Source: Macrostomum lignano
Lineage: Eukaryota
DNA: 64,000 bases
NCBI GenBank assembly: GCA_002269645.1
Contig: NIVC01002757.1
Location: 1 to 64,000, forward strand
Reading direction: 5' to 3'
Both the position numbers and the translations under genes were made by a program. Of the stretch, positions 18,801 through 47,014 are shown piece by piece; the first letter of the stretch is position 1; the number at the start of each line of letters is the position of its first letter. The notes under the pieces were generated by a model. That model saw only the letters and a program-made list of their open reading frames with translations, did no database searches and was not told the origin of the DNA.

Positions 18801-21800
18801 GAAGCCGAAGTGAACATTCGAGTCAGGCGAATTGGCGATATGCACAGGCGGCTAGCGGAGTCTGCAGATATCAGCACCCTGGCCAGGTCGCACCCGCCTC
18901 CGCCCACCAATCAGCATCGAGCTGCGATGCGGGCCACTCTGCTTAAGAACGACTCGTTTCTGGTTCATGAGCTGGAGGCTGAACTGGTTGAAGAGCAGGA
19001 GAACCGGGAGCGACAGGTAGGCGCCATGACCGCCACACTGGCCTGCTCGCAGGAGATGCTGGATGGACTCAGGATGGAGCGAGAATTGCTGGCTGAGGAG
19101 TTGAAGACTGCTCGGCTGACTGTTAAGGAGCAGGTGAGGGAAACTGGCTTGAGAATAGAGTTGGATTGGAGATTGAGTGTGAGATTAGATAGTGGATACA
19201 CAGATGCAGAGACCAGATAGGGAGATAGGAGAGGGTAGAAGATAGATGGCAGAGGGAGATAGGAGAAGGAAGAACGGAGATGCGAGAGGGAAGAGCGGAG
19301 ATGGGAGAGGGAAGAGCAGAGATGGGTGAGGGGAGAGCAGAGATGGGAGAGCGGAGATGGGAGAGGGAAGAGCAGAGAGGGGAGAGGGGAGAGCAGAGAA
19401 GAGAGAGCGGAGATGGGAGAGGGGAGAGCAGAGAAGGGAGAGCGGAGATGGGAGAGGGAGAGGGAAGAGCGGAGATGGGAGAGGGAGAGGGAAGAGCGGA
19501 GATGGGAGAGGGAGAGGGAAGAGCGGAGATGGGAGTGCGGAGAAGGTGCACAGGAGGAATAGTCAAAGCATATGAATGAATCTCTCTGAATATGCACCAC
19601 TTGCACCCAGGCGGAAACCATCAGCCAGTTAAGGAGTCGCATCGAAGCCCTCGGGCATGCCGAACAAGGATCAGAGCCCGCTGCTAAATCTGCCGATGCC
19701 ATAGACAATGAAGCTTATACTGTCGCTAAGAACATTGAATCCGATCAAAGCTGCTGCCAAATGGCTAACGAGGAAGACAAGCATTTGAAAGAGGCTGCTA
19801 AGGCTGATGTTGATCTAGAGGAAAGAGTGGAATGCGTGAGTCTTATGCATTGACAATGTTCATGAGAAGTGCTCAGTGGCTGGGAGATAAAATTCGGTAG
19901 ATATCGTAGCTAAATGCTTAATAGATAATTAAGACTCATGGAAGAGATCTAGAAGGGGTGATTTCAAATTTCTCTTCTTTTATCATTTGCCAGCTCGTTC
20001 AGAAACTCCGCGAAGAAATGGCCGATTCCAAGGCTAAGGACGCCAAACTAGAAGAGATGAATGAGCAAGTTCTGCGAATTAGCTCGCAGGCTGAGGCCCA
20101 GCTGCAGCAGGTATGATACTTATACTAACGATATACTACTTATGGCAGTATTATGGGGCTTCGGCTGCTGCCAGCTTCCCAGATCCTCAATTGCTGGGCC
20201 AACAGCCTCCCAGATCCCCAATTGCTGGGCCACCAGCCTCCCGATCCCCAATTGCTGGGCCACCAGCCTCCCGATCCCCAGTTTCTGGGTCAGCCTCCTA
20301 ATCCTCAGTTGCTGGGCCAGCTTCTCAGATCCTCAGTTGCTAGGCCAGCCTCTCAGATCCTCAGTTGCTGGGCCAGCTTCTCAGATCCTCAGTTGCTGGG
20401 CCAGCTTCTCAGATCCTCAGTTGCTGGGCCAGCCTCCTAATCCTCAGTTGCTGGGCCAGCCTCTCAGATCCTCAGCTGCTGGGCCAGCCTCTCAGATCCT
20501 CAGTTGCTGGGCCAGCCTCTCAGATCCTCAGTTGCTGGGCCAGCCTCCCAGATCCTCAGTTGCTGGGCCAGCCTTTCAGATCCTCAGTTGCTGGGCCAGC
20601 CTCTCAGATCCTCAGTTGCTGGGCCAGCCTCTCAGATCCTCAGTTGCTGGGCCAGCCTCCCAGATCCTCAGTTGCTGGGCTCCCAGATCCTCAGTTGCTG
20701 GGCCAGCCTCCTAATCCTCAGTTGCTGGGCCAGCCTCCCAGATCCTCAGTTGCTGGGCCAGCCTCCTAATCCTCAGTTGCTGGGCCAGCCTCCCAGATCC
20801 TCAGTTGCTAGGCCAGCCTCCTAATCCTCAGTTGCTGGGCCAGCCTCCTAATCCTCAGTTGCTGGGCCAGCCTCCCAGATCCTCAGTTGCTAGGCCAGCC
20901 TCCTAATCCTCAGTTGCTGGGCCAGCCTCCCAGATCCTCAGTTGCTGGGCCAGCCTCCTAATCCTCAGTTGGTGGGCCAGCCTCCTAATCCTCAGTTGCT
21001 GGGCCACTAGCGTGCCAGGTTCCCAAGTGCGGTGAATGTAGACATGTTCTTTATAAGTTTTAATAAAGCAACAATCATGAAATCAAATATCCAGCTTGAA
21101 GAGCAATTGGAATTGGAACTGTCAGCTTCCATGGCCAAAGACAAGCAGATTGACAGTCTGCAAGAGAAGGTGGCGCTGTTGGAATCCGAAACTGAGCAGA
21201 AAGTCCAACTTGTGAGTTCTATATTGTGAATTTGAATTAGTTTTTACGAAGAGATGCTTAACTTTCATTACCAACATTAGGCTCAAGTAAAATGATTTTT
21301 CTTCTCTGAACGCCTGCTTCAGCTCAACCAACAGCTGCTGGAGCTGAAAGACCAGCTGGAATCTTCTCAGAGTGGAGTTGATGCCTCTAGCAAATCATCT
21401 GATTTGGTGAGCTCATTTCTTAAATTAATGATCAATAAAATACACAAACCTTATAGGCAACACCATTATTTGATATTTTATAGGCAAGCCTAAAATTTCC
21501 GACGTATAAGGGGTTTTTGAAAAATATGAAAACTTGATAAACGACTACAACTGGTTTGCAAACTAGTGCTATTAAATATATAATTAGCCTTAGTATAACA
21601 ATTGAGCCATTTTGAACATTTCAGCTAAATCAGCAGCTAGCCCAACTCCAGTCGCAATTGGCAGAAAAGTCACGTGACAGTGATAAGCTCTCTGTCGAAC
21701 TAGATGAGATGGTAAGCAAGCGTGTGGGAGTTGGGACTCTTCTCTTATTTTTATCAACTTATTGTTTTTAATTGAAGGTTGAGAAGCTCCGCCAGTCTGA

Positions 21801-24800
21801 AGCGAAGTTGGAGTCCATTTCGGCGGAGTCCTCAGCAAAGGATCAGCAGCTGCTGGAGCTTCAGCGTCGGCTGGATGAAGCTGAGTCTGAAGCTGAGAAT
21901 CAGCTTAAGCAGGTGAGTTTAAGAAAATGAGCTTTAGACAGGGCGTCAGATGGGAAACAGGGTGTCAGATGGGAAACAGGGTGTCAGATGGGAAACAGGG
22001 TGTCAGATGGAAAACAGGGTGTCAGATGGGAAACAGGGTGTCAAATGGGAAACAGGGAGTCAGATGGGAAACAGGGTGTCAGAATGAGAAACAGGGTGTC
22101 AGATAGGAAACAGGGTGTCAGATGAGAAGCAGGGTGTCAGATATGGGAACAGGGTGTCTGATGGGAAACAGGGTGTGGCATTTGAAATATGAAAACCCTA
22201 ACAAACCTGAGAATTACCGAAATAAAAGTTTTTTAACAATTCTGAAAAAATTGCCAAAATATTTGGATTTTCAACTAGCCTAAAAATTACCGAACTTTGA
22301 GGATTTAATGCAACCCCAAAAATTGCAAGCGTGTGGAAGTTGGGACTCTTCTCTTATTTTTATCAACTTATTGTTTTTCATTGAAGGTTGAGAAGCTCCG
22401 CCAGTCTGAAGCGAAGTTGGAGTCCATTTCGGCGGAGTCCTCAGCAAAGGATCAGCAGCTGCTGGAGCTTCAGCGTCGGCTGGATGAAGCTGAGTCTGAA
22501 GCTGAGAATCAGCTTAAGCAGGTGAGTTTAAGAAAATGAGCTTTAGACAGGGTGTCAGATGGGAACAGGGTGTCAGATGGGAAACAGGGTGTCAGATATG
22601 GGAACAGGGTCTCAGATATGAAACAGGGTGTCAGATGGAACACAGGGTGTCAGAATGGGAAACAGGTTGTCAGATATGGGAACAGGGTGTCAGCAATGGG
22701 AACAGGGTGTCAGATGAGAAACAGGGTGTCAGAATGAGAAACAGGGTGTCAGATAGGAAACAGGGTGTCAGATGAGAAGCAGGGTGTCAGATATGGGAAC
22801 AGGGTGTCTGATGGGAAACAGGGTGTGGCATTTGAAATATGAAAACCCTAACAAACCTGAGAATTACCGAAATAAAAGGTTTTTAACAATTCTGAAAAAA
22901 TTGCCAAAATATTTGGATTTTCAACTAGCCTAAAAATTACCGAACTTTGAGGATTTAATGCAACCCCAAAAATTGCAAGCGTGTGGAAGTTGGGACTCTT
23001 CTCTTATTTTTATCAACTTATTGTTTTTCATTGAAGGTTGAGAAGCTCCGCCAGTCTGAAGCGAAGTTGGAGTCCATTTCGGCGGAGTCCTCAGCAAAGG
23101 ATCAGCAGCTGCTGGAGCTTCAGCGTCGGCTGGATGAAGCTGAGTCTGAAGCTGAGAATCAGCTTAAGCAGGTGAGTTTAAGAAAATGAGCTTTAGACAG
23201 GGTGTCAGATGGGAACAGGGTGTCAGATGGGAAACAGGGTGTCAGATATGGGAACAGGGTCTCAGATATGAAACAGGGTGTCAGATGGAACACAGGGTGT
23301 CAGAATGGGAAACAGGTTGTCAGATATGGGAACAGGGTGTCAGCAATGGGAACAGGGTGTCAGATGGGAAACAGGGTATCAGATGAGAAACAGGGTGTCA
23401 GATAAAGGAAAGGGTGTGGCATTTGAAATATGAAAACCCTAACAAACCTGAGAATTACCGAAATAAAAGGTTTTTAAGAATTCTGAAAAAATTGCCAAAA
23501 TATTTGGATTTTCAACGAGCCTAAAAATTACCGAACTTTGAGGATTTTATGCAACCCCAAAAATTGCAAGCGTGTGGAAGTTGGGACTCTTCTCTTATTT
23601 TTATCAACTTATTGTTTTTCATTGAAGGTTGAGAAGCTCCGCCAGTCTGAAGCGAAGTTGGAGTCCATTTCGGCGGAGTCCTCAGCAAAGGATCAGCAGC
23701 TGCTGGAGCTTCAGCGTCGGCTGGATGAAGCTGAGTCTGAAGCTGAGAATCAGCTTAAGCAGGTGAGTTTAAGAAAATGAGCTTTAGACAGGGTGTCAGA
23801 TGGGAACAGGGTGTCAGATGGGAAACAGGGTGTCAGATATGGGAACAGGGTCTCAGATATGAAACAGGGTGTCAGATGGAACACAGGGTGTCAGAATGGG
23901 AAACAGGTTGTCAGATATGGGAACAGGGTGTCAGCAATGGGAACAGGGTGTCAGATGGGAAACAGGGTATCAGATGAGAAACAGGGTGTCAGATAAAGGA
24001 AAGGGTGTGGCATTTGAAATATGAAAACCCTAACAAACCTGAGAATTACCGAAATAAAAGGTTTTTAAGAATTCTGAAAAAATTGCCAAAATATTTGGAT
24101 TTTCAACGAGCCTAAAAATTACCGAACTTTGAGGATTTTATGCAACCCCAAAAATTGCAAGCGTGTGGAAGTTGGGACTCTTCTCTTATTTTTATCAACT
24201 TATTGTTTTTCATTGAAGGTTGAGAAGCTCCGCCAGTCTGAAGCGAAGTTGGAGTCCATTTCGGCGGAGTCCTCAGCAAAGGATCAGCAGCTGCTGGAGC
24301 TTCAGCGTCGGCTGGATGAAGCTGAGTCTGAAGCTGAGAATCAGCTTAAGCAGGTGAGTTTAAGAAAATGAGCTTTAGACAGGGTGTCAGATGGGAAACA
24401 GGGTGTCAGATATGGGAACAGGGTCTCAGATATGAAACAGGGTGTCAGGTGGAACACAGGGTGTCAGAATGGGAAACAGGTTGTCAGATATGGGAACAGG
24501 GTGTCAGCAATGGCAACAGGGTGTCAGATGGGAAACAGGGTGTCAGATGGGAAACAGGGTGTCAGATGGGAACAGGGTGTCAGATGGGAACAGGGTGTCA
24601 GATGGGAACCGGGTGTCAGATGGGAAACAGGGTGTCAGATGGGAAACAGGGTGTCAGATGGGAAACAGGGTGTCAGATGGGAACAGGGTGTCAGATGGGA
24701 AACAGGGTGTCAGATGGGAAACAGGGTGTCAAATATAGGAAGAGGTGTCAGATGGGAAACAGGGTGTCAGATGGAAAACAGGGTGTCAGATGGGAAACAG

Positions 24801-27800
24801 GGTGTCAGATGGGAAACAGGGTGTCAGATGGAAAACAGGGTGTCAGATGGGAAACAGGGTGTCAAATGGGAAACAGGGAGTCAGATGGGAAACAGGGTGT
24901 CAGAGGAGAAACAGGGTGTCAGAATGAGAAACAGGGTGTCAGATAGGAAACAGGGTGTCAGATGAGAAGCAGGGTGTCAGATATGGGAACAGGGTGTCTG
25001 ATGGGAAACAGGGTGTGGCATTTGAAATATGAAAACCCTAACAAACCTGAGAATTACCGAAATAAAAGGTTTTTAACAATTCTGAAAAAATTGCCAAAAT
25101 ATTTGGATTTTCAACTAGCCTAAAAATTACCGAACTTTGAGGATTTAATGCAACCCCAAAAATTGCAAGCGTGTGGAAGTTGGGACTCTTCTCTTATTTT
25201 TATCAACTTATTGTTTTTCATTGAAGGTTGAGAAGCTCCGCCAGTCTGAAGCGAAGTTGGAGTCCATTTCGGCGGAGTCCTCAGCAAAGGATCAGCAGCT
25301 GCTGGAGCTTCAGCGTCGGCTGGATGAAGCTGAGTCTGAAGCTGAGAATCAGCTTAAGCAGGTGAGTTTAAGAAAATGAGCTTTAGACAGGGTGTCAGAT
25401 GGGAACAGGGTGTCAGATGGGAAACAGGGTGTCAGATGAGAACAGGGTGTCAGATGGGAACAGCGTGTCAGATGGAACCGGGTGTCAGATGGGAAACCGG
25501 GTGTCAGATGGGAAACAGGGTGTCAGATGGGAAACAGGGTGTCAGATGGGAACAGGGTGTCAGATGGGAAACAGGGTGTCAGATGGGAAACAGGGTGTCA
25601 AATATAGGAAGAGGTGTCAGATGGGAAACAGGGTGTCAGATGGAAAACAGGGTGTCAGATGGGAAACAGGGTGTCAGATAGGAAACAGGGTGTCAGATGG
25701 AAAACAGGGTGTCAGATGGGAAACAGGGTGTCAAATGGGAAACAGGGAGTCAGATGGGAAACAGGGTGTCAGAGGAGAAACAGGGTGTCAGAATGAGAAA
25801 CAGGGTGTCAGATAGGAAACAGGGTGTCAGATGAGAAGCAGGGTGTCAGATATGGGAACAGGGTGTCTGATGGGAAACAGGGTGTGGCATTTGAAATATG
25901 AAAACCCTAACAAACCTGAGAATTACCGAAATAAAAGGTTTTTAACAATTCTGAAAAAATTGCCAAAATATTTGGATTTTCAACTAGCCTAAAAATTACC
26001 GAACTTTGAGGATTTAATGCAACCCCAAAAATTGCAAGCGTGTGAAAGTTGGGACTCTTCTCTTATTTTTATCAACTTATTGTTTTTCATTGAAGGTTGA
26101 GAAGCTCCGCCAGTCTGAAGCGAAGTTGGAGTCCATTTCGGCGGAGTCCTCAGCAAAGGATCAGCAGCTGCTGGAGCTTCAGCGTCGGCTGGATGAAGCT
26201 GAGTCTGAAGCTGAGAATCAGCTTAAGCAGGTGAGTTTAAGAAAATGAGCTTTAGACAGGGTGTCAGATGGGAAACAGGGTGTCAGATGGGAACAGGGTG
26301 TCAGATGGGAAACAGGGTGTCAGATGGGAACAGGGTGTCAGATGGGAACAGCGTGTCAGATGGAACCGGGTGTCAGATGGGAAACCGGGTGTCAGATGGG
26401 AAACAGGGTGTCAGATGGGAACAGGGTGTCAGATGGGAAACAGGGTGTCAGATATGGAAAACAGGATGTCAGATGGGAAACAGGGTGTCAGATGGGAAAC
26501 AGGGTGTCAAATATAGGAAGAGGTGTCAGATGAGAAACAGGGTGTCAGATGGAAAACAGGGTGTCAGATGGAAAACAGGGTGTCAGATGGGAAACAGGGT
26601 GTCAGATGGGAAACAGGGTGTCAGATGGGAAACAGGGTGTCAAATGGGAAGCAGGGAGTCAAATGGGAAACAGGGTGTCAGATGAGAAACAGGGTGTCAG
26701 AATGAGAAACAGGGTGTCAGATGGAAAACAGGGTGTCAGATGGGAAACAGGGTGTCAAATGGGAAGCAGGGAGTCAGATGGGAAACAGGGTGTCAGATGG
26801 GAACCGGGTGTCAGATGGAAAACAGGGTGTCAGATGGGAAACAGGGTGTCAAATGGGAAACAGGGTGTCAGATGGGAAACAGGGTGTCAGATATGGGAAG
26901 CAGGGAGTCAGATGGGAAACAGGGTGTCAGATGGGAAACAGGGTGTCAAATGGGAAGCAGGGTGTCAGATAGGAAACAGGGTGTCAGATGAGAAACAGGG
27001 TGTCAGATGGGAAACAGGGTGTCAAATGGGAAGCAGGGAGTCAGATGGGAAACAGGGTGTCAGATGAGAAACAGGGTGTCAGAATGAGAAACAGGGTGTC
27101 AGATAGGAAACAGGGTGTCAGATGAGAAACAGGGTGTCAGATATGGGAACAGGGTGTCTGATGGGAAACAGGGTGTGGCATATGAAGTATGAAAACCCTA
27201 ACAAACCTGAGAATTACTGAAATAAAAGGTTTTTAACAATTCTGAAAAAATTGCCAAAATATTTGGATTTTCAACTAGCCTAAAAATTACCGAACTTTGA
27301 GGATTTAATGCAACCCCAAAAATTGCAAGCGTGTGGAAGTTGGGACTCTTCTCTTATTTTTATCAACTTATTGTTTTTCATTGAAGGTTGAGAAGCTCCG
27401 CCAGTCTGAAGCGAAGTTGGAGTCCATTTCGGCGGAGTCCTCAGCAAAGGATCAGCAGCTGCTGGAGCTTCAGCGTCGGCTGGATGAAGCTGAGTCTGAA
27501 GCTGAGAATCAGCTTAAGCAGGTGAGTTTAAGAAAATGAGCTTTAGACAGGGTGTCAGATGGGAACAGGGTGTCAGATGGGAAACAGGGTGTCAGATATG
27601 GGAACAGGGTCTCAGATATGAAACAGGGTGTCAGATGGAACACAGGGTGTCAGAATGGGAAACAGGTTGTCAGATATGGGAACAGGGTGTCAGCAATGGG
27701 AACAGGGTGTCAGATGGGAAACAGGGTATCAGATGAGAAACAGGGTGTCAGATAAAGGAAAGGGTGTGGCATTTGAAATATGAAAACCCTAACAAACCTG

Positions 27801-30800
27801 AGAATTACCGAAATAAAAGGTTTTTAAGAATTCTGAAAAAATTGCCAAAATATTTGGATTTTCAACGAGCCTAAAAATTACCGAACTTTGAGGATTTTAT
27901 GCAACCCCAAAAATTGCAAGCGTGTGGAAGTTGGGACTCTTCTCTTATTTTTATCAACTTATTGTTTTTCATTGAAGGTTGAGAAGCTCCGCCAGTCTGA
28001 AGCGAAGTTGGAGTCCATTTCGGCGGAGTCCTCAGCAAAGGATCAGCAGCTGCTGGAGCTTCAGCGTCGGCTGGATGAAGCTGAGTCTGAAGCTGAGAAT
28101 CAGCTTAAGCAGGTGAGTTTAAGAAAATGAGCTTTAGACAGGGTGTCAGATGGGAAACAGGGTGTCAGATATGGGAACAGGGTCTCAGATATGAAACAGG
28201 GTGTCAGGTGGAACACAGGGTGTCAGAATGGGAAACAGGTTGTCAGATATGGGAACAGGGTGTCAGCAATGGCAACAGGGTGTCAGATGGGAAACAGGGT
28301 GTCAGATGGGAAACAGGGTGTCAGATGGGAACAGGGTGTCAGATGGGAACAGGGTGTCAGATGGGAACCGGGTGTCAGATGGGAAACAGGGTGTCAGATG
28401 GGAAACAGGGTGTCAGATGGGAAACAGGGTGTCAGATGGGAACAGGGTGTCAGATGGGAAACAGGGTGTCAGATGGGAAACAGGGTGTCAAATATAGGAA
28501 GAGGTGTCAGATGGGAAACAGGGTGTCAGATGGAAAACAGGGTGTCAGATGGGAAACAGGGTGTCAGATGGGAAACAGGGTGTCAGATGGAAAACAGGGT
28601 GTCAGATGGGAAACAGGGTGTCAAATGGGAAACAGGGAGTCAGATGGGAAACAGGGTGTCAGAGGAGAAACAGGGTGTCAGAATGAGAAACAGGGTGTCA
28701 GATAGGAAACAGGGTGTCAGATGAGAAGCAGGGTGTCAGATATGGGAACAGGGTGTCTGATGGGAAACAGGGTGTGGCATTTGAAATATGAAAACCCTAA
28801 CAAACCTGAGAATTACCGAAATAAAAGGTTTTTAACAATTCTGAAAAAATTGCCAAAATATTTGGATTTTCAACTAGCCTAAAAATTACCGAACTTTGAG
28901 GATTTAATGCAACCCCAAAAATTGCAAGCGTGTGGAAGTTGGGACTCTTCTCTTATTTTTATCAACTTATTGTTTTTCATTGAAGGTTGAGAAGCTCCGC
29001 CAGTCTGAAGCGAAGTTGGAGTCCATTTCGGCGGAGTCCTCAGCAAAGGATCAGCAGCTGCTGGAGCTTCAGCGTCGGCTGGATGAAGCTGAGTCTGAAG
29101 CTGAGAATCAGCTTAAGCAGGTGAGTTTAAGAAAATGAGCTTTAGACAGGGTGTCAGATGGGAACAGGGTGTCAGATGGGAAACAGGGTGTCAGATGAGA
29201 ACAGGGTGTCAGATGGGAACAGCGTGTCAGATGGAACCGGGTGTCAGATGGGAAACCGGGTGTCAGATGGGAAACAGGGTGTCAGATGGGAAACAGGGTG
29301 TCAGATGGGAACAGGGTGTCAGATGGGAAACAGGGTGTCAGATGGGAAACAGGGTGTCAAATATAGGAAGAGGTGTCAGATGGGAAACAGGGTGTCAGAT
29401 GGAAAACAGGGTGTCAGATGGGAAACAGGGTGTCAGATAGGAAACAGGGTGTCAGATGGAAAACAGGGTGTCAGATGGGAAACAGGGTGTCAAATGGGAA
29501 ACAGGGAGTCAGATGGGAAACAGGGTGTCAGAGGAGAAACAGGGTGTCAGAATGAGAAACAGGGTGTCAGATAGGAAACAGGGTGTCAGATGAGAAGCAG
29601 GGTGTCAGATATGGGAACAGGGTGTCTGATGGGAAACAGGGTGTGGCATTTGAAATATGAAAACCCTAACAAACCTGAGAATTACCGAAATAAAAGGTTT
29701 TTAACAATTCTGAAAAAATTGCCAAAATATTTGGATTTTCAACTAGCCTAAAAATTACCGAACTTTGAGGATTTAATGCAACCCCAAAAATTGCAAGCGT
29801 GTGAAAGTTGGGACTCTTCTCTTATTTTTATCAACTTATTGTTTTTCATTGAAGGTTGAGAAGCTCCGCCAGTCTGAAGCGAAGTTGGAGTCCATTTCGG
29901 CGGAGTCCTCAGCAAAGGATCAGCAGCTGCTGGAGCTTCAGCGTCGGCTGGATGAAGCTGAGTCTGAAGCTGAGAATCAGCTTAAGCAGGTGAGTTTAAG
30001 AAAATGAGCTTTAGACAGGGTGTCAGATGGGAAACAGGGTGTCAGATGGGAACAGGGTGTCAGATGGGAAACAGGGTGTCAGATGGGAACAGGGTGTCAG
30101 ATGGGAACAGCGTGTCAGATGGAACCGGGTGTCAGATGGGAAACCGGGTGTCAGATGGGAAACAGGGTGTCAGATGGGAACAGGGTGTCAGATGGGAAAA
30201 AGGGTGTCAGATATGGAAAACAGGATGTCAGATGGGAAACAGGGTGTCAGATGGGAAACAGGGTGTCAAATATAGGAAGAGGTGTCAGATGAGAAACAGG
30301 GTGTCAGATGGAAAACAGGGTGTCAGATGGAAAACAGGGTGTCAGATGGGAAACAGGGTGTCAGATGGGAAACAGGGTGTCAGATGGGAAACAGGGTGTC
30401 AAATGGGAAGCAGGGAGTCAAATGGGAAACAGGGTGTCAGATGAGAAACAGGGTGTCAGAATGAGAAACAGGGTGTCAGATGGAAAACAGGGTGTCAGAT
30501 GGGAAACAGGGTGTCAAATGGGAAGCAGGGAGTCAGATGGGAAACAGGGTGTCAGATGGGAACCGGGTGTCAGATGGAAAACAGGGTGTCAGATGGGAAA
30601 CAGGGTGTCAAATGGGAAACAGGGTGTCAGATGGGAAACAGGGTGTCAGATATGGGAAGCAGGGAGTCAGATGGGAAACAGGGTGTCAGATGGGAAACAG
30701 GGTGTCAAATGGGAAGCAGGGTGTCAGATAGGAAACAGGGTGTCAGATGAGAAACAGGGTGTCAGATGGGAAACAGGGTGTCAAATGGGAAGCAGGGAGT

Positions 30801-33800
30801 CAGATGGGAAACAGGGTGTCAGATGAGAAACAGGGTGTCAGAATGAGAAACAGGGTGTCAGATAGGAAACAGGGTGTCAGATGAGAAACAGGGTGTCAGA
30901 TATGGGAACAGGGTGTCTGATGGGAAACAGGGTGTGGCATATGAAGTATGAAAACCCTAACAAACCTGAGAATTACTGAAATAAAAGGTTTTTAACAATT
31001 CTGAAAAAATTGCCAAAATATTTGGATTTTCAACTAGCCTAAAAATTACCGAACTTTGAGGATTTAATGCAACCCCAAAAATTGCAAGCGTGTGGAAGTT
31101 GGGACTCTTCTCTTATTTTTATCAACTTATTGTTTTTCATTGAAGGTTGAGAAGCTCCGCCAGTCTGAAGCGAAGTTGGAGTCCATTTCGGCGGAGTCCT
31201 CAGCAAAGGATCAGCAGCTGCTGGAGCTTCAGCGTCGGCTGGATGAAGCTGAGTCTGAAGCTGAGAATCAGCTTAAGCAGGTGAGTTTAAGAAAATGAGC
31301 TTTAGACAGGGTGTCAGATGGGAACAGGGTGTCAGATGGGAAACAGGGTGTCAGATATGGGAACAGGGTCTCAGATATGAAACAGGGTGTCAGATGGAAC
31401 ACAGGGTGTCAGAATGGGAAACAGGTTGTCAGATATGGGAACAGGGTGTCAGCAATGGGAACAGGGTGTCAGATGGGAAACAGGGTATCAGATGAGAAAC
31501 AGGGTGTCAGATAAAGGAAAGGGTGTGGCATTTGAAATATGAAAACCCTAACAAACCTGAGAATTACCGAAATAAAAGGTTTTTAAGAATTCTGAAAAAA
31601 TTGCCAAAATATTTGGATTTTCAACGAGCCTAAAAATTACCGAACTTTGAGGATTTTATGCAACCCCAAAAATTGCAAGCGTGTGGAAGTTGGGACTCTT
31701 CTCTTATTTTTATCAACTTATTGTTTTTCATTGAAGGTTGAGAAGCTCCGCCAGTCTGAAGCGAAGTTGGAGTCCATTTCGGCGGAGTCCTCAGCAAAGG
31801 ATCAGCAGCTGCTGGAGCTTCAGCGTCGGCTGGATGAAGCTGAGTCTGAAGCTGAGAATCAGCTTAAGCAGGTGAGTTTAAGAAAATGAGCTTTAGACAG
31901 GGTGTCAGATGGGAACAGGGTGTCAGATGGGAAACAGGGTGTCAGATATGGGAACAGGGTCTCAGATATGAAACAGGGTGTCAGATGGAACACAGGGTGT
32001 CAGAATGGGAAACAGGTTGTCAGATATGGGAACAGGGTGTCAGCAATGGGAACAGGGTGTCAGATGGGAAACAGGGTATCAGATGAGAAACAGGGTGTCA
32101 GATAAAGGAAAGGGTGTGGCATTTGAAATATGAAAACCCTAACAAACCTGAGAATTACCGAAATAAAAGGTTTTTAAGAATTCTGAAAAAATTGCCAAAA
32201 TATTTGGATTTTCAACGAGCCTAAAAATTACCGAACTTTGAGGATTTTATGCAACCCCAAAAATTGCAAGCGTGTGGAAGTTGGGACTCTTCTCTTATTT
32301 TTATCAACTTATTGTTTTTCATTGAAGGTTGAGAAGCTCCGCCAGTCTGAAGCGAAGTTGGAGTCCATTTCGGCGGAGTCCTCAGCAAAGGATCAGCAGC
32401 TGCTGGAGCTTCAGCGTCGGCTGGATGAAGCTGAGTCTGAAGCTGAGAATCAGCTTAAGCAGGTGAGTTTAAGAAAATGAGCTTTAGACAGGGTGTCAGA
32501 TGGGAAACAGGGTGTCAGATATGGGAACAGGGTCTCAGATATGAAACAGGGTGTCAGGTGGAACACAGGGTGTCAGAATGGGAAACAGGTTGTCAGATAT
32601 GGGAACAGGGTGTCAGCAATGGCAACAGGGTGTCAGATGGGAAACAGGGTGTCAGATGGGAAACAGGGTGTCAGATGGGAACAGGGTGTCAGATGGGAAC
32701 AGGGTGTCAGATGGGAAACAGGGTGTCAGATGGGAAACAGGGTGTCAGATGGGAAACAGGGTGTCAGATGGGAACAGGGTGTCAGATGGGAAACAGGGTG
32801 TCAGATGGGAAACAGGGTGTCAAATATAGGAAGAGGTGTCAGATGGGAAACAGGGTGTCAGATGGAAAACAGGGTGTCAGATGGGAAACAGGGTGTCAGA
32901 TGGGAAACAGGGTGTCAGATGGAAAACAGGGTGTCAGATGGGAAACAGGGTGTCAAATGGGAAACAGGGAGTCAGATGGGAAACAGGGTGTCAGAGGAGA
33001 AACAGGGTGTCAGAATGAGAAACAGGGTGTCAGATAGGAAACAGGGTGTCAGATGAGAAGCAGGGTGTCAGATATGGGAACAGGGTGTCTGATGGGAAAC
33101 AGGGTGTGGCATTTGAAATATGAAAACCCTAACAAACCTGAGAATTACCGAAATAAAAGGTTTTTAACAATTCTGAAAAAATTGCCAAAATATTTGGATT
33201 TTCAACTAGCCTAAAAATTACCGAACTTTGAGGATTTAATGCAACCCCAAAAATTGCAAGCGTGTGGAAGTTGGGACTCTTCTCTTATTTTTATCAACTT
33301 ATTGTTTTTCATTGAAGGTTGAGAAGCTCCGCCAGTCTGAAGCGAAGTTGGAGTCCATTTCGGCGGAGTCCTCAGCAAAGGATCAGCAGCTGCTGGAGCT
33401 TCAGCGTCGGCTGGATGAAGCTGAGTCTGAAGCTGAGAATCAGCTTAAGCAGGTGAGTTTAAGAAAATGAGCTTTAGACAGGGTGTCAGATGGGAACAGG
33501 GTGTCAGATGGGAAACAGGGTGTCAGATGAGAACAGGGTGTCAGATGGGAACAGCGTGTCAGATGGAACCGGGTGTCAGATGGGAAACCGGGTGTCAGAT
33601 GGGAAACAGGGTGTCAGATGGGAAACAGGGTGTCAGATGGGAACAGGGTGTCAGATGGGAAACAGGGTGTCAGATGGGAAACAGGGTGTCAAATATAGGA
33701 AGAGGTGTCAGATGGGAAACAGGGTGTCAGATGGAAAACAGGGTGTCAGATGGGAAACAGGGTGTCAGATAGGAAACAGGGTGTCAGATGGAAAACAGGG

Positions 33801-36800
33801 TGTCAGATGGGAAACAGGGTGTCAAATGGGAAACAGGGAGTCAGATGGGAAACAGGGTGTCAGAGGAGAAACAGGGTGTCAGAATGAGAAACAGGGTGTC
33901 AGATAGGAAACAGGGTGTCAGATGAGAAGCAGGGTGTCAGATATGGGAACAGGGTGTCTGATGGGAAACAGGGTGTGGCATTTGAAATATGAAAACCCTA
34001 ACAAACCTGAGAATTACCGAAATAAAAGGTTTTTAACAATTCTGAAAAAATTGCCAAAATATTTGGATTTTCAACTAGCCTAAAAATTACCGAACTTTGA
34101 GGATTTAATGCAACCCCAAAAATTGCAAGCGTGTGGAAGTTGGGACTCTTCTCTTATTTTTATCAACTTATTGTTTTTCATTGAAGGTTGAGAAGCTCCG
34201 CCAGTCTGAAGCGAAGTTGGAGTCCATTTCGGCGGAGTCCTCAGCAAAGGATCAGCAGCTGCTGGAGCTTCAGCGTCGGCTGGATGAAGCTGAGTCTGAA
34301 GCTGAGAATCAGCTTAAGCAGGTGAGTTTAAGAAAATGAGCTTTAGACAGGGTGTCAGATGGGAAACAGGGTGTCAGATGGGAACAGGGTGTCAGACGGG
34401 AAACAGGGTGTCAGATGGGAACAGGGTGTCAGATGGGAACAGCGTGTCAGATGGAACCGGGTGTCAGATGGGAAACCGGGTGTCAGATGGGAAACAGGGT
34501 GTCAGATGGGAACAGGGTGTCAGATGGGAAACAGGGTGTCAGATATGGAAAACAGGATGTCAGATGGGAAACAGGGTGTCAGATGGGAAACAGGGTGTCA
34601 AATATAGGAAGAGGTGTCAGATGAGAAACAGGGTGTCAGATGGAAAACAGGGTGTCAGATGGAAAACAGGGTGTCAGATGGGAAACAGGGTGTCAGATGG
34701 GAAACAGGGTGTCAGATGGGAAACAGGGTGTCAAATGGGAAGCAGGGAGTCAAATGGGAAACAGGGTGTCAGATGAGAAACAGGGTGTCAGAATGAGAAA
34801 CAGGGTGTCAGATGGAAAACAGGGTGTCAGATGGGAAACAGGGTGTCAAATGGGAAGCAGGGAGTCAGATGGGAAACAGGGTGTCAGATGGGAACCGGGT
34901 GTCAGATGGAAAACAGGGTGTCAGATGGGAAACAGGGTGTCAAATGGGAAACAGGGTGTCAGATGGGAAACAGGGTGTCAGATATGGGAAGCAGGGAGTC
35001 AGATGGGAAACAGGGTGTCAGATGGGAAACAGGGTGTCAAATGGGAAGCAGGGTGTCAGATAGGAAACAGGGTGTCAGATGAGAAACAGGGTGTCAGATG
35101 GGAAACAGGGTGTCAAATGGGAAGCAGGGAGTCAGATGGGAAACAGGGTGTCAGATGAGAAACAGGGTGTCAGAATGAGAAACAGGGTGTCAGATAGGAA
35201 ACAGGGTGTCAGATGAGAAACAGGGTGTCAGATATGGGAACAGGGTGTCTGATGGGAAACAGGGTGTGGCATATGAAGTATGAAAACCCTAACAAACCTG
35301 AGAATTACTGAAATAAAAGGTTTTTAACAATTCTGAAAAAATTGCCAAAATATTTGGATTTTCAACGAGCCTAAAAATTACCGAACTTTGAGGATTTTAT
35401 GCAACCCCAAAAATTGCAAGCGTGTGGAAGTTGGGACTCTTCTCTTATTTTTATCAACTTATTGTTTTTCATTGAAGGTTGAGAAGCTCCGCCAGTCTGA
35501 AGCGAAGATGGAGTCCATTTCGGCGGAGTCCTCAGCAAAGGATCAGCAGCTGCTGGAGCTTCAGCGTCGGCTGGATGAAGCTGAGTCTGAAGCTGAGAAT
35601 CAGCTTAAGCAGGTGAGTTTAAGAAAATGAGCTTTAGACAGGGTGTCAGATGGGAAACAGGGTATCAGATGGGAACAGGGTGTCAGATGGGAAACAGGGT
35701 GTCAGATATGAAACAGGGTGTCAGATATGAAACAGGGTGTCAGATGGGAAACAGGGTGTCAGATATGGGAACAGGGTGTCAGATATGAAACAGGGTGTCA
35801 GGTGGAACACAGGGTGTCAGATGGGAAACAGGGTGTCAGATGTTAAACAGGGTGTCAGATGGGAAACAGGGTGTCAGATGGGGAACAGGGTGTCAGATGG
35901 GAAACAGGGTGTCAGGTGGAACACAGGGTGTCAGATGGGAAACAGGGTGTCAGATGTTAAACAGGGTGTCAGATGGGAAACAGGGTGTCACATAAGGGAA
36001 CAGGGTGGCTGATATAAAATATAAAAAACTTCAACAAACCCGAAAATTTCTAAGATATAAGGATTTCAACTAAACCTGAAAAATTACCAAAATATGAAAA
36101 CTTGACAAACGACTAGAAGTGGTTTGCAAATTAGTGCTATTAAATATATTATTAGCCTTAGTAAAATACTTGAGCCATTTTGAACATTTCAGCTAAATCA
36201 GCAGCTAGCCCAACTCCAGTCGCAATTGGCAGAAAAGTCACGTGACAGTGATAAGCTCTCTGTCGAACTAGATGAGACGGTAAGCAAGCGTGTGGGAGTT
36301 GGGACTCTTCTCTTATTTTTATCAACTTATTGTTTTTAATTGAAGGTTGAGAAGCTCCGCCAGTCTGAAGCGAAGTTGGAGTCCATTTCGGCGGAGTCCT
36401 CAGCAAAGGATCAGCAGCTGCTGGAGCTTCAGCGTCGGCTGGATGAAGCTGAGTCTGAAGCTGAGAATCAGCTTAAGCAGGTGAGTTTAAGAAAATGAGC
36501 TTTAGACAGGGCGTCAGATGGGAAACAGGGTGTCAGATGGGAACAGGGTGTCAGATGGGAAACAGGGTGTCAGATGGGAACAGGGTGTCAGATGGGAACA
36601 GGGTGTCAGATGGAACCGGGTGTCAGATGGGAAACAGGGTGTCAGATGGGAAACAGGGTGTCAAATGGGAAACAGGGTGTCAGATGGGAAACAGGGTGTC
36701 AAATGGGAAACAGGGTGTCAGATATGGAAAACAGGATGTCAGATGGGAAACAGGGTGTCAGATGGGAAACAGGGTGTCAGATGGGAAACAGGGTGTCAGA

Positions 36801-39244
36801 TGGGAAACAGGGTGTCAGATGGGAAACAGGGTGTCAAATGGGAAACAGGGTGTCAGATATGGAAAACAGGATGTCAGATGGGAAACAGGGTGTCAGATGG
36901 GAAACAGGGTGTCAGATGGGAAACAGGGTGTCAAATATAGGAAGAGGTGTCAGATGGGAAACAGGGTGTCAGATGGAAAACAGGGTGTCAGATGGGAAAC
37001 AGGGTGTCAGATGGAAAACAGGGTGTCAGATGGGAAACAGGGTGTCAGATGGGAAACAGGGTGTCAGATGGGAAACAGGGTGTCAAATGGGAAGCAGGGA
37101 GTCAGATGGGAAACAGGGTGTCAGATGAGAAACAGGGTGTCAGAATGAGAACCAGGGTGTCAGATGGAAAACAGGGTGTCAGATGGGAAACAGGGTGTCA
37201 AATGGGAAGCAGGGAGTCAGATGGGAAACAGGGTGTCAGATGAGAAACAGGGTGTCAGAATGAGAAACAGGGTGTCAGATAGGAAACAGGGTTTCAGATG
37301 AGAAACAGGGTGTCAGATATGGGAACAGGGTGTCTGATGGGAAACAGGGTGTGGCATTTGAAATATGAAAACCCTAACAAACCTGAGAATTACCGAAATA
37401 AAAGGTTTTTAACAATTCTGAAAAAATTGCCAAAATATTTGGATTTTCAACGAGCCTAAAAATTACCGAACTTTGAGGATTTAATGCAACCCCAAAAATT
37501 GCAAGCGTGTGGAAGTTGGGACTCTTCTCTTATTTTTATCAACTTATTGTTTTTCATTGAAGGTTGAGAAGCTCCGCCAGTCTGAAGCGAAGATGGAGTC
37601 CATTTCGGCGGAGTCCTCAGCAAAGGATCAGCAGCTGCTGGAGCTTCAGCGTCGGCTGGATGAAGCTGAGTCTGAAGCTGAGAATCAGCTTAAGCAGGTG
37701 AGTTTAAGAAAATGAGCTTTAGACAGGGTGTCAGATGGGAAACAGGGTATCAGATGGGAACAGGGTGTCAGATGGGAAACAGGGTGTCAGATATGAAACA
37801 GGGTGTCAGATATGAAACAGGGTGTCAGATGGGAAACAGGGTGTCAGATATGGGAACAGGGTGTCAGATATGAAACAGGGTGTCAGGTGGAACACAGGGT
37901 GTCAGATGGGAAACAGGGTGTCAGATGTTAAACAGGGTGTCAGATGGGAAACAGGGTGTCAGATGGGGAACAGGGTGTCAGATGGGAAACAGGGTGTCAG
38001 GTGGAACACAGGGTGTCAGATGGGAAACAGGGTGTCAGATGTTAAACAGGGTGTCAGATGGGAAACAGGGTGTCACATAAGGGAACAGGGTGGCTGATAT
38101 AAAATATAAAAAACTTCAACAAACCCGAAAATTTCTAAGATATAAGGATTTCAACCAAACCTGAAAAATTACCAAAATATGAAAACTTGACAAACGACTA
38201 GAAGTGGTTTGCAAATTAGTGCTATTAAATATATTATTAGCCTTAGTAAAATACTTGAGCCATTTTGAACATTTCAGCTAAATCAGCAGCTAGCCCAACT
38301 CCAGTCGCAATTGGCAGAAAAGTCACGTGACAGTGATAAGCTCTCTGTCGAACTAGATGAGACGGTAAGCAAGCGTGTGGGAGTTGGGACTCTTCTCTTA
38401 TTTTTATCAACTTATTGTTTTTAATTGAAGGTTGAGAAGCTCCGCCAGTCTGAAGCGAAGTTGGAGTCCATTTCGGCGGAGTCCTCAGCAAAGGATCAGC
38501 AGCTGCTGGAGCTTCAGCGTCGGCTGGATGAAGCTGAGTCTGAAGCTGAGAATCAGCTTAAGCAGGTGAGTTTAAGAAAATGAGCTTTAGACAGGGCGTC
38601 AGATGAGAAACAGGGTGTCAGATGGGAACAGGGTGTCAGATGGGAAACAGGGTGTCAGATGGGAACAGGGTGTCAGATGGGAACAGGGTGTCAGATGGAA
38701 CCGGGTGTCAGATGGGAAACAGGGTGTCAGATGGGAAACAGGGTGTCAAATGGGAAACAGGGTGTCAGATATGGAAAACAGGATGTCAGATGGGAAACAG
38801 GGTGTCAGATGGGAAACAGGGTGTCAGATGGGAAACAGGGTGTCAAATGGGAAACAGGGTGTCAGATATGGAAAACAGGATGTCAGATGGGAAACAGGGT
38901 GTCAGATGGGAAACAGGGTGTCAGATGGGAAACAGGGTGTCAGATGGGAAACAGGGTGTCAAATATAGGAAGAGGTGTCAGATGGGCAACAGGGTGTCAG
39001 ATGGAAAACAGGGTGTCAGATGGGAAACAGGGTGTCAGATGGAAAACAGGGTGTCAGATGGGAAACAGGGTGTCAGATGGGAAACAGGGTGTCAGATGGG
39101 AAACAGGGTATCAGATGGGAACAGGGTGTCAGATGGGAAACAGGGTGTCAGATATGAAACAGGGTGTCAGATATGCAAACAGGGTGTCAGATATGCAAAC
39201 AGGGTGTCAGATATGCAAACAGGGTGTTAGATATGGGATCAGGG

Positions 39245-39305
<61 letters not shown>

Positions 39306-39310
39306 GCCTT

Positions 39311-39365
<55 letters not shown>

Positions 39366-39393
39366 GCCTTTCTGTCTGTCTGTCTGTCTCTCC

Positions 39394-39440
<47 letters not shown>

Positions 39441-39441
39441 A

Positions 39442-39481
<40 letters not shown>

Positions 39482-39486
39482 GCCTT

Positions 39487-39525
<39 letters not shown>

Positions 39526-46420: not shown

Positions 46421-47014
46421 GAGGTTGTTTTCACTTCTTATTAAGTATATGACTAGCAGTCTAATCACTAGAAGACATATTTTGCTTGCTCGATCGAGTA
46501 AAACTGCTGACCTAAAATTATAGGATTTTTCGATTCAGTAAAAAATCACTTTGGCACTGTCAATAAATTTTTTGTGAATCGGTTTGACTGACTTGCTATT
46601 TTGATTGTTGCATGCTGTAGTCAAAGCGAAGAATAAAACAACAGGTGAAATTCTGATTTTGATCGAATGCACCTCCCGACTTGGATATCAGAACATAAAA
46701 ATCAACCGAAAAATCTTGTCAACTAGAAATAAATAATTTATTGGCAAAGGCAGGTGTCTTTTAAACACTACTGATTGAAAATTGGGTTGATCAGTAGTAT
46801 AATCATAAATCATGATTTGAGCTATCTGCTTGGCTCAGCGTAAACAGTCGGGGGTTGCAGATTGCAAAATTTCTGTATAAATTTGTTGGCCCCAGGAATC
46901 CAGATTTGCCTCTTGAGTTGTGTTAGCAAAGTTGTCTTTGGATCAGTGTTTCACCTTGGCAACTTGGAATTTGGATAGCAACAAATACAGCTCTTCATTC
47001 CACACGAATTGAAG

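What the first reader, a model, noticed from the sequence alone, without database searches (positions are those of the whole stretch)
21625..38565. Mitotic kinesin-6 whose coiled-coil stalk is expanded by 20 near-identical tandem exon copies
Seen: 20 copies of a 135-nt symmetric (phase 0/0) exon, all with intact acceptor and donor and no stop codons, between unique stalk exons of a KIF20-like gene. Translations are identical except L->M in copies 17 and 19. There are also 3 copies of an 87-nt exon. Including all copies adds ~913 aa over a single-copy gene (about 2,557 vs 1,644 aa). Established: KIF20A/B act in spindle midzone organisation and cytokinesis, and coiled coils rise ~0.15 nm per residue. 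Inference: the array could add ~135 nm of stalk, and because every exon is frame-neutral, exon skipping or copy-number variation would give a length-tunable motor. I know of no such array in a kinesin-6, but cannot check novelty.
Basis: partly seen in the sequence, partly recalled or inferred. Interest (0 to 1): 0.9.

Follow-up and report, generated by a model that had tools for sequence, protein, structure and literature searches.

The report
Tandem exon array in flatworm kinesin-6
A cell-division motor gene (kinesin-6, KIF20-like) of the flatworm Macrostomum lignano carries, as assembled, 20 almost identical in-frame copies of one stalk exon. The array is real and not described before, but it looks like a very young repeat expansion driven by intronic minisatellites, and nothing yet shows it makes a length-tunable motor.

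Summary
There are 20 copies of a 135-nt phase-0/0 exon and 3 copies of an 87-nt exon, all with AG/GT splice sites and no stops. They lie inside an intact KIF20-type kinesin-6 gene (1,644 aa with one copy, 2,557 aa with all copies).

The window is Macrostomum lignano DV1, assembly Mlig_3_7, contig NIVC01002757.1. The deposited gene model is truncated at the first copy, so the array is unannotated.

The introns between copies are almost as identical as the exons. Two 3,759-bp four-exon higher-order units differ by 1 nt. Each unit is bounded by a 19-bp minisatellite. The array is therefore very young or homogenised, and intact reading frames say little about selection.

A paralogous contig carries (87-nt exon + 135-nt exon) x5 with the same minisatellite and more divergent copies. 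Amplification of this module is therefore real and recurrent. The exact count of 20 rests on a noisy PacBio assembly that was polished with short reads.

The module is predicted to be one continuous helix. Whether all copies reach the mRNA is untested.

Best reading: a coding, minisatellite-driven exon VNTR, analogous to LPA KIV-2. The "length-tunable motor" idea remains speculation.

The parts
9891..43872 (+). Whole KIF20-like kinesin-6 gene (M. lignano BOX15_Mlig033938g1 locus), from ATG to stop
   Evidence: Spliced model built from ORFs and GT-AG sites with consistent phases. It has no internal stop. The first 1,080 aa are identical to PAA55420.1.
9891..9906 (+). Exon 1 (ATG; MDQVK plus the first base of N)
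   Evidence: Pattern match to the N-terminus of P0123/P0126; donor GTAAGT.
11597..15767 (+). Motor-domain exons 11597-12105, 12969-13192, 13938-14391 and 15021-15767, including the long loop-6 insertion
   Evidence: tblastn with the kinesin-1 motor. Pfam Kinesin 2.4e-80. PDB KIF20A 5e-88 over residues 66-525.
17309..21406 (+). Unique stalk exons 17309-17482, 18540-19133, 19611-19835, 19994-20110 and 21323-21406, plus the doubtful exon 21095-21211
   Evidence: Phase-0 GT-AG exons. Exon 21095-21211 is absent from P0123/P0126 and has no match in the paralog.
21625..21711 (+). Exon B copy 1 (87 nt, 29 aa)
21778..38565 (+). Array of 20 exon A copies (135 nt, 45 aa each), with exon B copies 2 and 3 at 36193-36279 and 38278-38364. 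Order: B A1-A17 B A18 A19 B A20.
   Evidence: Unit lengths are 591, 609, 650, 868/869, 990/1008, 1217 and 1291 bp.
24219..31736 (+). Two copies of a 3,759-bp higher-order unit, each with four exon A copies (A5-A8, A9-A12). They differ by 1 nt. A third, slightly different copy starts at 32328 (A14-A17).
   Evidence: Global alignments. Flank haplotype classes repeat in the same order.
35478..38565 (+). Two copies of a 2,085-bp [A - B - A] unit (A17 B A18 / A19 B A20). Both first A copies carry L->M and both B copies carry M->T.
21938..39248 (+). 19-bp minisatellite (ACAGGGTGTCAGATGGGAA) starting about 25 nt after the donor of every exon A (11-48 copies per intron). It runs on after the last copy (38591-39248).
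   Evidence: TRF. Counts per intron. The same minisatellite follows every exon A in the paralog.
39993..40805 (+). Three 117-nt (39-aa) phase-0/0 stalk exons: 39993-40109, 40481-40597 and 40689-40805
   Evidence: They are similar to each other and to other stalk exons.
41142..43872 (+). C-terminal exons 41142-41555, 42338-42693 and 43542-43872 (stop)
   Evidence: The donor at 42693 is the least certain junction.

Best explanation
The region is an intragenic tandem amplification, a coding 'exon VNTR', inside an intact KIF20-type kinesin-6 gene of Macrostomum lignano.

Origin (inferred from anatomy). The ancestral module was [87-nt exon B, 66-nt intron, 135-nt exon A, 19-bp minisatellite]. Unequal exchange or replication slippage between the minisatellite blocks that flank each module multiplied it. 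In this locus a derivative that had lost exon B was then amplified. This happened first unit by unit and then in blocks of four (a 3.76-kb higher-order unit) and as [A-B-A] blocks.

Age (shown). The amplification is much younger than the split from the paralogous locus, or it is continuously homogenised.

Why it is tolerated (shown and inferred). Both exons are phase 0/0 and encode uninterrupted alpha-helix, so added copies keep the frame and simply lengthen the helical stalk. The expansion is therefore tolerated and probably close to neutral.

Consequence (inferred). If the identical splice sites are all used, which is the default expectation, the product is a 2,557-aa motor with about 135 nm of extra stalk. 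Copy number then differs between loci and probably between alleles.
For: Gene identity and intactness:
- The window is 100% identical to NIVC01002757.1 positions 1-31871.
- KIF20A is the best match over the whole motor, and the top protein hits are named KIF20A/B.
- The full model has no stop and all junctions are GT-AG.

Array anatomy:
- 20 A copies and 3 B copies.
- Every A is followed by the 19-mer minisatellite.
- The ~210-bp 'unique' part of the A-A intron corresponds to a 37-mer repeat that lies upstream of exon B in the paralog. The A-only unit therefore looks like a BA unit with B deleted.

Youth:
- The flanking intron sequence is nearly identical among copies.
- The two higher-order units differ by 1 nt in 3,759, and the third by 4 mismatches plus an 18-bp gap.
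- By contrast, unique exons of the two loci differ at dS=0.10.

Amplification is real and recurrent:
- The paralogous contig NIVC01003851.1 has (B-A)x5 with the same minisatellite.
- Its copies differ by 1-6 nt in 289 from each other and by 7-9 nt from the window's copies, with locus-specific shared changes.

Helical module:
- No Pro or Gly; the dominant hydrophobic period is 45/13 = 3.46 residues.
- AlphaFold2 (single sequence) gives one helix through B + 3xA + the next exon, mean pLDDT 90.

Context:
- Tandem repeats make up 15% of this genome (PMC5730564).
- Another M. lignano gene, Mlig-ap2, has 46 large coding repeats in a manually curated sequence (PMC6410801).
- Other stalk exons are mutually similar 39-aa phase-0 exons, so the stalk also grew by older exon duplications.
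Against: - The copy number and the near-perfect identity come from one Canu assembly of error-prone PacBio CLR reads, polished by Pilon with multi-mapping Illumina and RNA-seq reads. Polishing can homogenise copies, and assembly can mis-count units. The 17-kb array is near the limit of what such reads span (my inference).
- There is no transcript evidence that more than one or two copies are spliced in. The transcript-guided public models either stop in the first copy (PAA55420.1) or include one B and one A (PAA49536.1). Short-read transcript assembly would collapse repeats anyway.
- A pooled exon-versus-intron contrast is marginal (p=0.047). It could hint at some constraint rather than strict neutrality.
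- 45 residues is not a multiple of 7, so the heptad register shifts by 3 at every copy. Whether a regular dimeric coiled coil forms is not shown.
Confidence: 0.7

Rival explanations
1. Assembly artefact. The array exists, but its length, and above all the three near-identical 3.76-kb blocks and the two 2.09-kb blocks, is inflated or mis-counted by the assembler. The identity of the copies is exaggerated by short-read polishing.
For: - The two higher-order units differ by 1 nt in 3,759 even though each contains more than 100 minisatellite repeats.
- The assembly is Canu 1.4 on PacBio CLR reads, polished by Pilon with Illumina and RNA-seq reads.
- The genome is known to be hard to assemble and redundant.
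- The paralogous contig ends in an inverted partial copy of the same gene, which is typical of CLR artefacts.
Against: - Assemblers usually collapse tandem repeats rather than expand them (general knowledge).
- Units are distinguishable by minisatellite length and by SNP classes that recur in a consistent order.
- Private variants (L->M, M->T) survived polishing.
- The paralog independently carries 5 diverged copies.
- Collapsing every duplicated block would still leave about 10 exon A copies.
Confidence: 0.2
2. The copies are real in the genome but mostly silent. Splicing joins one (or a few) exon A copies to exon 39993 and skips the rest, so the protein stays near 1,600-1,700 aa.
For: - The public transcript-guided model of the paralog contains a single B and a single A of the 'QRRL' type. 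It joins that A directly to the next stalk exon, although the last genomic copy is the 'RRRL' type.
- Models from the older ML2 assembly also contain 1-3 copies.
Against: - All copies have identical strong splice sites (AG / GTGAGT) and identical intron flanks, so nothing distinguishes a used copy from a skipped one.
- Short-read transcript assemblies collapse identical repeats, so the models are uninformative.
- In known multi-exon coding VNTRs such as LPA KIV-2, allele copy number sets the protein isoform size (PMC7613587, PMC11462820).
Confidence: 0.25
3. Adaptive, regulated 'length-tunable' mitotic motor. Selection maintains the array, and exon skipping or copy-number variation tunes stalk length for function.
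For: - All 25 A and 8 B copies in the two loci are intact.
- Exons are slightly less variable than adjacent intron, pooled p=0.047.
- The gene as a whole is under purifying selection, dN/dS=0.11.
- Amplification is present in both loci.
Against: - The copies are too young for intactness to be informative.
- Substitutions among copies are 7 non-synonymous to 3 synonymous, about neutral.
- The exon/intron contrast is confounded by RNA-seq polishing and by the repeat-derived nature of the intron.
- Minisatellite-rich introns occur throughout this gene and genome, so expansion needs no selective explanation.
Confidence: 0.07
4. Mutually exclusive exon cluster. One of the 20 copies is chosen per transcript, as in Dscam or myosin heavy chain clusters.
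For: Tandem homologous exons of equal length with conserved splice sites.
Against: - 18 of the 20 copies encode the same peptide, so a choice would create no diversity.
- The exon length is a multiple of 3, so joint inclusion keeps the frame and nothing enforces exclusivity.
- The intron flanks are identical, so there are no copy-specific selector sequences.
Confidence: 0.02

Closest known systems
[quoted passage not shown]
   Same: - Head-to-tail genomic units that each contain whole exons plus introns.
- The units are nearly identical, introns included.
- The unit is in frame, so copy number sets protein length.
[quoted passage not shown]
   Different: - Here the unit is much smaller (0.6-1.3 kb, one exon).
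- It is bounded by a minisatellite and organised in higher-order blocks.
- It encodes a helical stalk segment rather than a folded domain.
- Copy-number polymorphism and isoform sizes are not yet shown.
KIF20A / KIF20B (MKLP2 / MPP1) kinesin-6 motors
   Same: - N-terminal motor with P-loop (GKT), SSRSH and DLAGSE motifs and a long loop-6 insertion.
- Best structural-sequence match is KIF20A.
- A long helical stalk and a basic/Ser-rich tail. The single-copy length of 1,644 aa is close to human KIF20B (about 1,820 aa, from my own knowledge).
   Different: I know of no described kinesin-6 with a stalk built from many identical exon modules, and none turned up in the literature searches. Only 45-50% motor identity to named KIF20 proteins. 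Function in M. lignano is untested.
Mlig-ap2 adhesive protein of M. lignano (46 tandem coding repeats of 255/221 aa)
   Same: Same species; a large array of near-identical coding repeats inside one gene, in a manually curated sequence (PMC6410801). It shows that such arrays are a feature of this genome.
   Different: A secreted structural protein whose repetitiveness is plausibly functional. The genomic exon structure of its repeats was not examined here.
Higher-order-repeat macrosatellites and minisatellite-mediated unequal crossing-over
   Same: - Nested periodicities (19 bp, then 0.6-1.3 kb, then 3.76 kb).
- Near-identity of the higher-order units.
- Copies within a locus are more alike than copies between loci, i.e. 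concerted evolution.
   Different: The repeat unit carries a spliced, in-frame coding exon of an essential-type gene.

Membership tests
Kinesin-6 (KIF20A/B subfamily) | N-terminal kinesin motor domain with P-loop, switch I and switch II motifs | tested here: met
   Pfam PF00225 2.4e-80 over residues 75-514. GVTSAGKTHT, SSRSHS and DLAGSE are visible in the translation.
Kinesin-6 (KIF20A/B subfamily) | Long insertion in loop 6 of the motor | tested here: met
   About 118 aa lie between GKTHTIQ and RFCVWVSYAEIYNE, against about 30 aa in kinesin-1. The KIF20A chains align across this region as one stretch.
Kinesin-6 (KIF20A/B subfamily) | Closer to KIF20 than to other kinesin families | tested here: met
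   PDB hits: KIF20A 5e-88 (299 bits, full motor), ZEN-4 (another kinesin-6) 6.6e-53, KIF13B 5e-42. All named top database hits are KIF20A/KIF20B. No phylogenetic tree was built.
Kinesin-6 (KIF20A/B subfamily) | Role at the spindle midzone and in cytokinesis | not testable with these tools
   Needs localisation or RNAi in M. lignano.
Coding multi-exon VNTR (LPA KIV-2 type) | Head-to-tail genomic units each containing complete exon(s) with splice sites | tested here: met
   20 units with AG|135 nt|GTGAGT.
Coding multi-exon VNTR (LPA KIV-2 type) | Unit keeps the reading frame | tested here: met
   135 and 87 nt, phase 0/0. The all-copy model translates to 2,557 aa without a stop.
Coding multi-exon VNTR (LPA KIV-2 type) | Units near-identical, including non-coding parts | tested here: met
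   Mean pairwise difference is 1.3% in the intron flank and 0.16% in the exon.
Coding multi-exon VNTR (LPA KIV-2 type) | Copy number varies between alleles or individuals | not testable with these tools
   Only one assembly is available. The paralogous locus has 5 BA units against 20 A + 3 B here, which shows lability but not allelic polymorphism.
Coding multi-exon VNTR (LPA KIV-2 type) | All copies are present in the mRNA, and protein size follows copy number | not testable with these tools
   No long-read cDNA is accessible. The public gene models are truncated or collapsed.
Mutually exclusive exon cluster | Alternative exons differ in sequence and give distinct isoforms | tested here: not met
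   18 of 20 copies are nucleotide-identical.
Mutually exclusive exon cluster | A mechanism that forbids joint inclusion (frame incompatibility, selector/docking RNA, steric intron) | tested here: not met
   The exon length is a multiple of 3. Introns are 456-1,156 nt with identical flanks.
Alpha-helical coiled-coil stalk | Continuous helix with about 3.5-residue hydrophobic periodicity | tested here: met
   Strongest Fourier component at 45/13 = 3.46 residues; no Pro or Gly. AF2 gives helix 22-230 at pLDDT about 95.
Alpha-helical coiled-coil stalk | Heptad register maintained along the repeat, and dimer formation | tested here: inconclusive
   45 mod 7 = 3, so the best register shifts at each copy. 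Only a monomer was modelled, and no dedicated coiled-coil predictor was available.

The most novel reading that the evidence does not exclude
M. lignano really makes a ~2,500-aa kinesin-6 whose stalk contains about 20 identical 45-residue helical modules. The number of modules differs between the duplicated loci and between worm lines. This would be a natural length series of a cytokinesis motor, usable to ask how stalk length affects midzone function.
Probability: 0.3. Interest if true: 0.5.

Novelty: new member of a known kind. Interest (0 to 1): 0.35.

Why it matters
If the array is transcribed in full, it would be, to my knowledge, the first kinesin whose stalk length is set by a copy-number-variable exon array. 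M. lignano can be made transgenic and is amenable to RNAi, so the effect of stalk length on a mitotic motor could be tested with natural alleles.

More soberly, it is a clean example of how minisatellite-rich introns multiply in-frame exons and build long coiled coils. The older, diverged 39-aa stalk exons of the same gene suggest that the process has happened before.

It also flags a mis-annotated gene in the reference assembly: the model is truncated and frameshifted. It is a warning case for annotating repeat-rich genomes.

Tried and rejected
- Mutually exclusive splicing cluster: rejected, because the copies are identical and frame-neutral.
- A transposable element or a gene on the other strand inside the units: there are no minus-strand ORFs of 90 aa or more, and the + strand ORFs are minisatellite read-through.
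- tRNA or other RNA genes in the array: none. The only Rfam hit is a weak tRNA-like element at 40895-40964, outside the array.
- Orthologues from other species to compare the stalk: a stalk/tail query returned only five M. lignano proteins, so no cross-species test was possible. The contig collections on offer hold no animal genomes and were not scanned.
- Transcript evidence from the protein database: only gene models were found, and they are truncated or collapsed at the array.
- Selection test on the copies: there are too few substitutions. The 7 non-synonymous to 3 synonymous count and the Fisher tests are inconclusive.
- Literature: nothing on Macrostomum kinesin-6, and nothing on exon duplication in kinesin stalks.
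- Additional domains in the stalk or tail: Pfam finds none.


Full report
**1. What is in the sequence**

An approximate search with the 135-nt exon finds exactly 20 copies on the + strand between 21778 and 38565, and none on the other strand. Every copy is preceded by AG and followed by GTGAGT. Eighteen copies are nucleotide-identical, and copies 17 and 19 carry one change, T31A (L->M).

The 87-nt exon occurs three times, at 21625, 36193 and 38278, flanked by AG and GTAAGC. The last two copies carry T86C (M->T). The order is B A1-A17 B A18 A19 B A20.

**2. The gene**

tblastn with a kinesin-1 motor locates a motor domain on the + strand at 11.8-15.4 kb. I built a spliced model from open frames, GT-AG sites and consistent phases. 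Two additions came from database proteins:
- the first exon at 9891-9906 (MDQVK plus one base);
- a 39-aa exon at 39993-40109.

The model has no internal stop.

Evidence that the gene is a KIF20-type kinesin-6:
- Pfam finds only the kinesin motor (2.4e-80).
- The best solved-structure matches are three KIF20A entries that align over the whole motor, including the long loop-6 insertion (5e-88). ZEN-4 follows at 6.6e-53 and other families at 1e-42 or weaker.
- All named top hits in the large protein database are KIF20A/KIF20B at 45-50% identity.

It is absent from both transcript-guided public models and has no counterpart in the paralogous locus.

**3. Where the window comes from**

A stalk/tail query returned only Macrostomum lignano proteins. 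The contig encoding one of them, PAA55420.1 (BOX15_Mlig033938g1, 'partial'), is 100% identical to the window over 31,871 bases. The window is therefore the start of NIVC01002757.1 in assembly Mlig_3_7, GCA_002269645.1.

That assembly was made with Canu 1.4 from PacBio CLR reads. It was polished with Pilon using Illumina and RNA-seq reads. Tandem repeats make up 15% of the genome, and 180 Mb lies in duplicated blocks that are at least 95% identical (PMC5730564).

The deposited gene model runs into the first exon A out of frame and stops. The array is therefore in a public database but is unannotated. I found no paper mentioning it.

**4. Anatomy of the array**

Each exon A is followed, about 25 nt after the donor, by 11-48 copies of a 19-bp minisatellite (ACAGGGTGTCAGATGGGAA). 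Then comes about 210 bp of non-19-mer sequence, then the next acceptor.

Unit lengths are 591, 609, 650, 868/869, 990/1008, 1217 and 1291 bp, and they recur in order:
- Units A5-A8 and A9-A12 form two 3,759-bp higher-order blocks that differ by a single nucleotide.
- A14-A17 is a third block, with 4 mismatches and an 18-bp gap.
- The end of the array is a 2,085-bp [A-B-A] block present twice. Both copies share the L->M and M->T variants.
- SNP classes in the intron flanks repeat in the same order as the length classes.

The ~210-bp 'unique' intron part resembles a 37-bp repeat that lies upstream of exon B in the paralog. Its last ~57 nt equal the B-A intron. The A-only unit therefore looks like a BA unit that lost exon B. 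This last step is inference.

**5. The paralogous locus**

A second contig, NIVC01003851.1 (PAA49536.1), carries a copy of the gene. Its unique exons are 92-99% identical to the window's. Over 835 codons dS = 0.10 and dN = 0.012, giving dN/dS = 0.11.

It has five [B, 67-nt intron, A] units, each followed by the same 19-mer minisatellite, all with intact splice sites.
- Its units differ from each other by 1-6 nt in 289.
- They differ from the window's units by 7-9 nt plus an indel.
- All five share locus-specific changes.

Amplification of this module is therefore not an artefact of one contig. Copies are more alike within a locus than between loci. This means either independent amplification after the loci split or ongoing homogenisation.

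**6. What intactness does and does not show**

Within the window the intron flanks are nearly as uniform as the exons. 8 of 233 intron sites vary against 1 of 135 exon sites (Fisher p = 0.16). Mean pairwise difference is 1.3% in the intron flank and 0.16% in the exon.
- In the paralog the figures are 4 of 67 intron sites against 4 of 222 exon sites (p = 0.087).
- Pooled, p = 0.047.

This is marginal. It is also confounded, because exons, but not introns, were additionally polished with RNA-seq reads, and the intron part is itself repeat-derived.

The substitutions that distinguish A and B copies across both loci are 7 non-synonymous and 3 synonymous, close to the neutral expectation.

The array is far younger than the dS = 0.10 split. 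Open frames and intact splice sites are therefore what one expects with or without selection.

**7. The encoded module**

Exon A (VEKLRQSEAKLESISAESSAKDQQLLELQRRLDEAESEAENQLKQ) has no Pro or Gly. Its strongest hydrophobic periodicity is 45/13 = 3.46 residues.

AlphaFold2, run on a single sequence, predicts one continuous helix through exon B, three A copies and the next exon, at pLDDT about 95. This fits a stalk segment.

However, 45 is 6 heptads plus 3, so the heptad register shifts at each junction. Dimeric coiled-coil continuity is not shown.

The neighbouring stalk exons are also phase 0/0, mostly 117 nt, and significantly similar to one another (z up to 8.7 against shuffles). This suggests older rounds of the same process.

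**8. Most likely explanation**

The array is a coding exon VNTR created by unequal exchange or slippage between the minisatellite blocks that flank an in-frame, helix-coding exon. It is tolerated because each copy only lengthens a helical stalk.

The closest known analogue in kind is the LPA KIV-2 repeat, where allele copy number sets isoform size (PMC11462820, PMC7613587). In the same species, Mlig-ap2 has 46 large coding repeats (PMC6410801).

By analogy, and because the splice sites are identical, inclusion of all copies is the default expectation. It is nevertheless unproven. The available gene models are truncated or contain one copy, which short-read transcript assembly would produce in any case.

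**9. Rivals**

- An inflated or mis-counted assembly is a real possibility for the exact number, because the blocks are near-identical and the assembly is from CLR reads. It is unlikely for the existence of a multi-copy array. The units are distinguishable, private variants persist, and the paralog has five diverged copies.
- Silent copies cannot be excluded without long cDNA.
- A mutually exclusive exon cluster is excluded by identity and frame neutrality.
- An adaptive, regulated length-tunable motor has no support beyond the weak exon/intron contrast.

**10. Verdict**

The gene assignment is confirmed. The functional interpretation is untested and its main argument (intactness) is uninformative.

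This is a new, undescribed member of a known kind of structure, in a genome where tandem repeats are rampant. Interest is moderate to low unless long reads and long cDNA show a 2.5-kaa motor with variable copy number.

Noticed in passing
window 46900-64000 (+ strand): A second gene follows the kinesin. Its exons encode VWD (weak), TIL and ShK domains at 49.5-51.4 kb. From about 52.6 kb to the window end there are many long ORFs extremely rich in K, R and C with no Pfam match. This architecture resembles the adhesive protein Mlig-ap1 (KR-rich regions plus VWD/C8/TIL; PMC6410801). Identity with Mlig-ap1 was not checked.
   Followed up: partly
window 40895-40964 (+), intron between exons 40689-40805 and 41142-41555: A tRNA-like element. 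Rfam tRNA scores 31.1 bits, just above the gathering score, but ARAGORN calls no tRNA. It is probably a tRNA-derived SINE or a pseudogene.
   Followed up: partly
window 13223-21006 and 39245-43391: Almost every intron of the kinesin gene holds its own long minisatellite. Examples: 40-mer at 13223-13863, 22-mer at 14404-14918, 24-mer x55 at 15833-17144, 23-mer x40 at 17530-18451, 28-mer x30 at 20170-21006, 24-mer at 40122-40416, 30-mer at 41623-42083 and 22-mer at 42759-43368.
   Followed up: no
window 20170-21006 and 48447-49349: The 28-bp minisatellite of a kinesin intron (GCCAGCCTCTCAGATCCTCAGTTGCTGG) reappears as its reverse complement, with about one mismatch per unit, 27 kb downstream in the neighbouring gene. 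A related 31-mer sits in the same intron of the paralog.
   Followed up: no
window 3619-3648 and 4836-4863: Two short interstitial blocks of perfect telomere-type repeat (GGTTAG x5, i.e. TTAGGG) lie upstream of the gene. They sit among 30-bp repeats that recur at 803, 3182, 4710 and 7421.
   Followed up: no
L002 149-2795 (minus strand), i.e. one end of contig NIVC01003851.1: An inverted partial copy of kinesin exons, 95-98% identical for the counterparts of window exons 15021-19133 and about 76% for the 19611-19835 counterpart. It lies about 17 kb upstream of the same exons in forward orientation. It is either a real inverted duplication or a palindromic PacBio assembly artefact at a contig end.
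   Followed up: no
window 21700-21880 (B1-A1 junction): The deposited model PAA55420.1 reads exon A in the wrong frame (…SVELDE RLRSSASLKRSW…) and ends inside the first copy. The reference annotation of this gene is therefore truncated and frameshifted.
   Followed up: partly
window 21095-21211: An exon-like 117-nt phase-0/0 segment with good splice sites. It encodes a peptide similar to exons 40481 and 40689 (z about 8). It is absent from the paralogous locus and from the transcript-guided models. It may be a locus-specific exon, an alternative exon or a dead one.
   Followed up: partly
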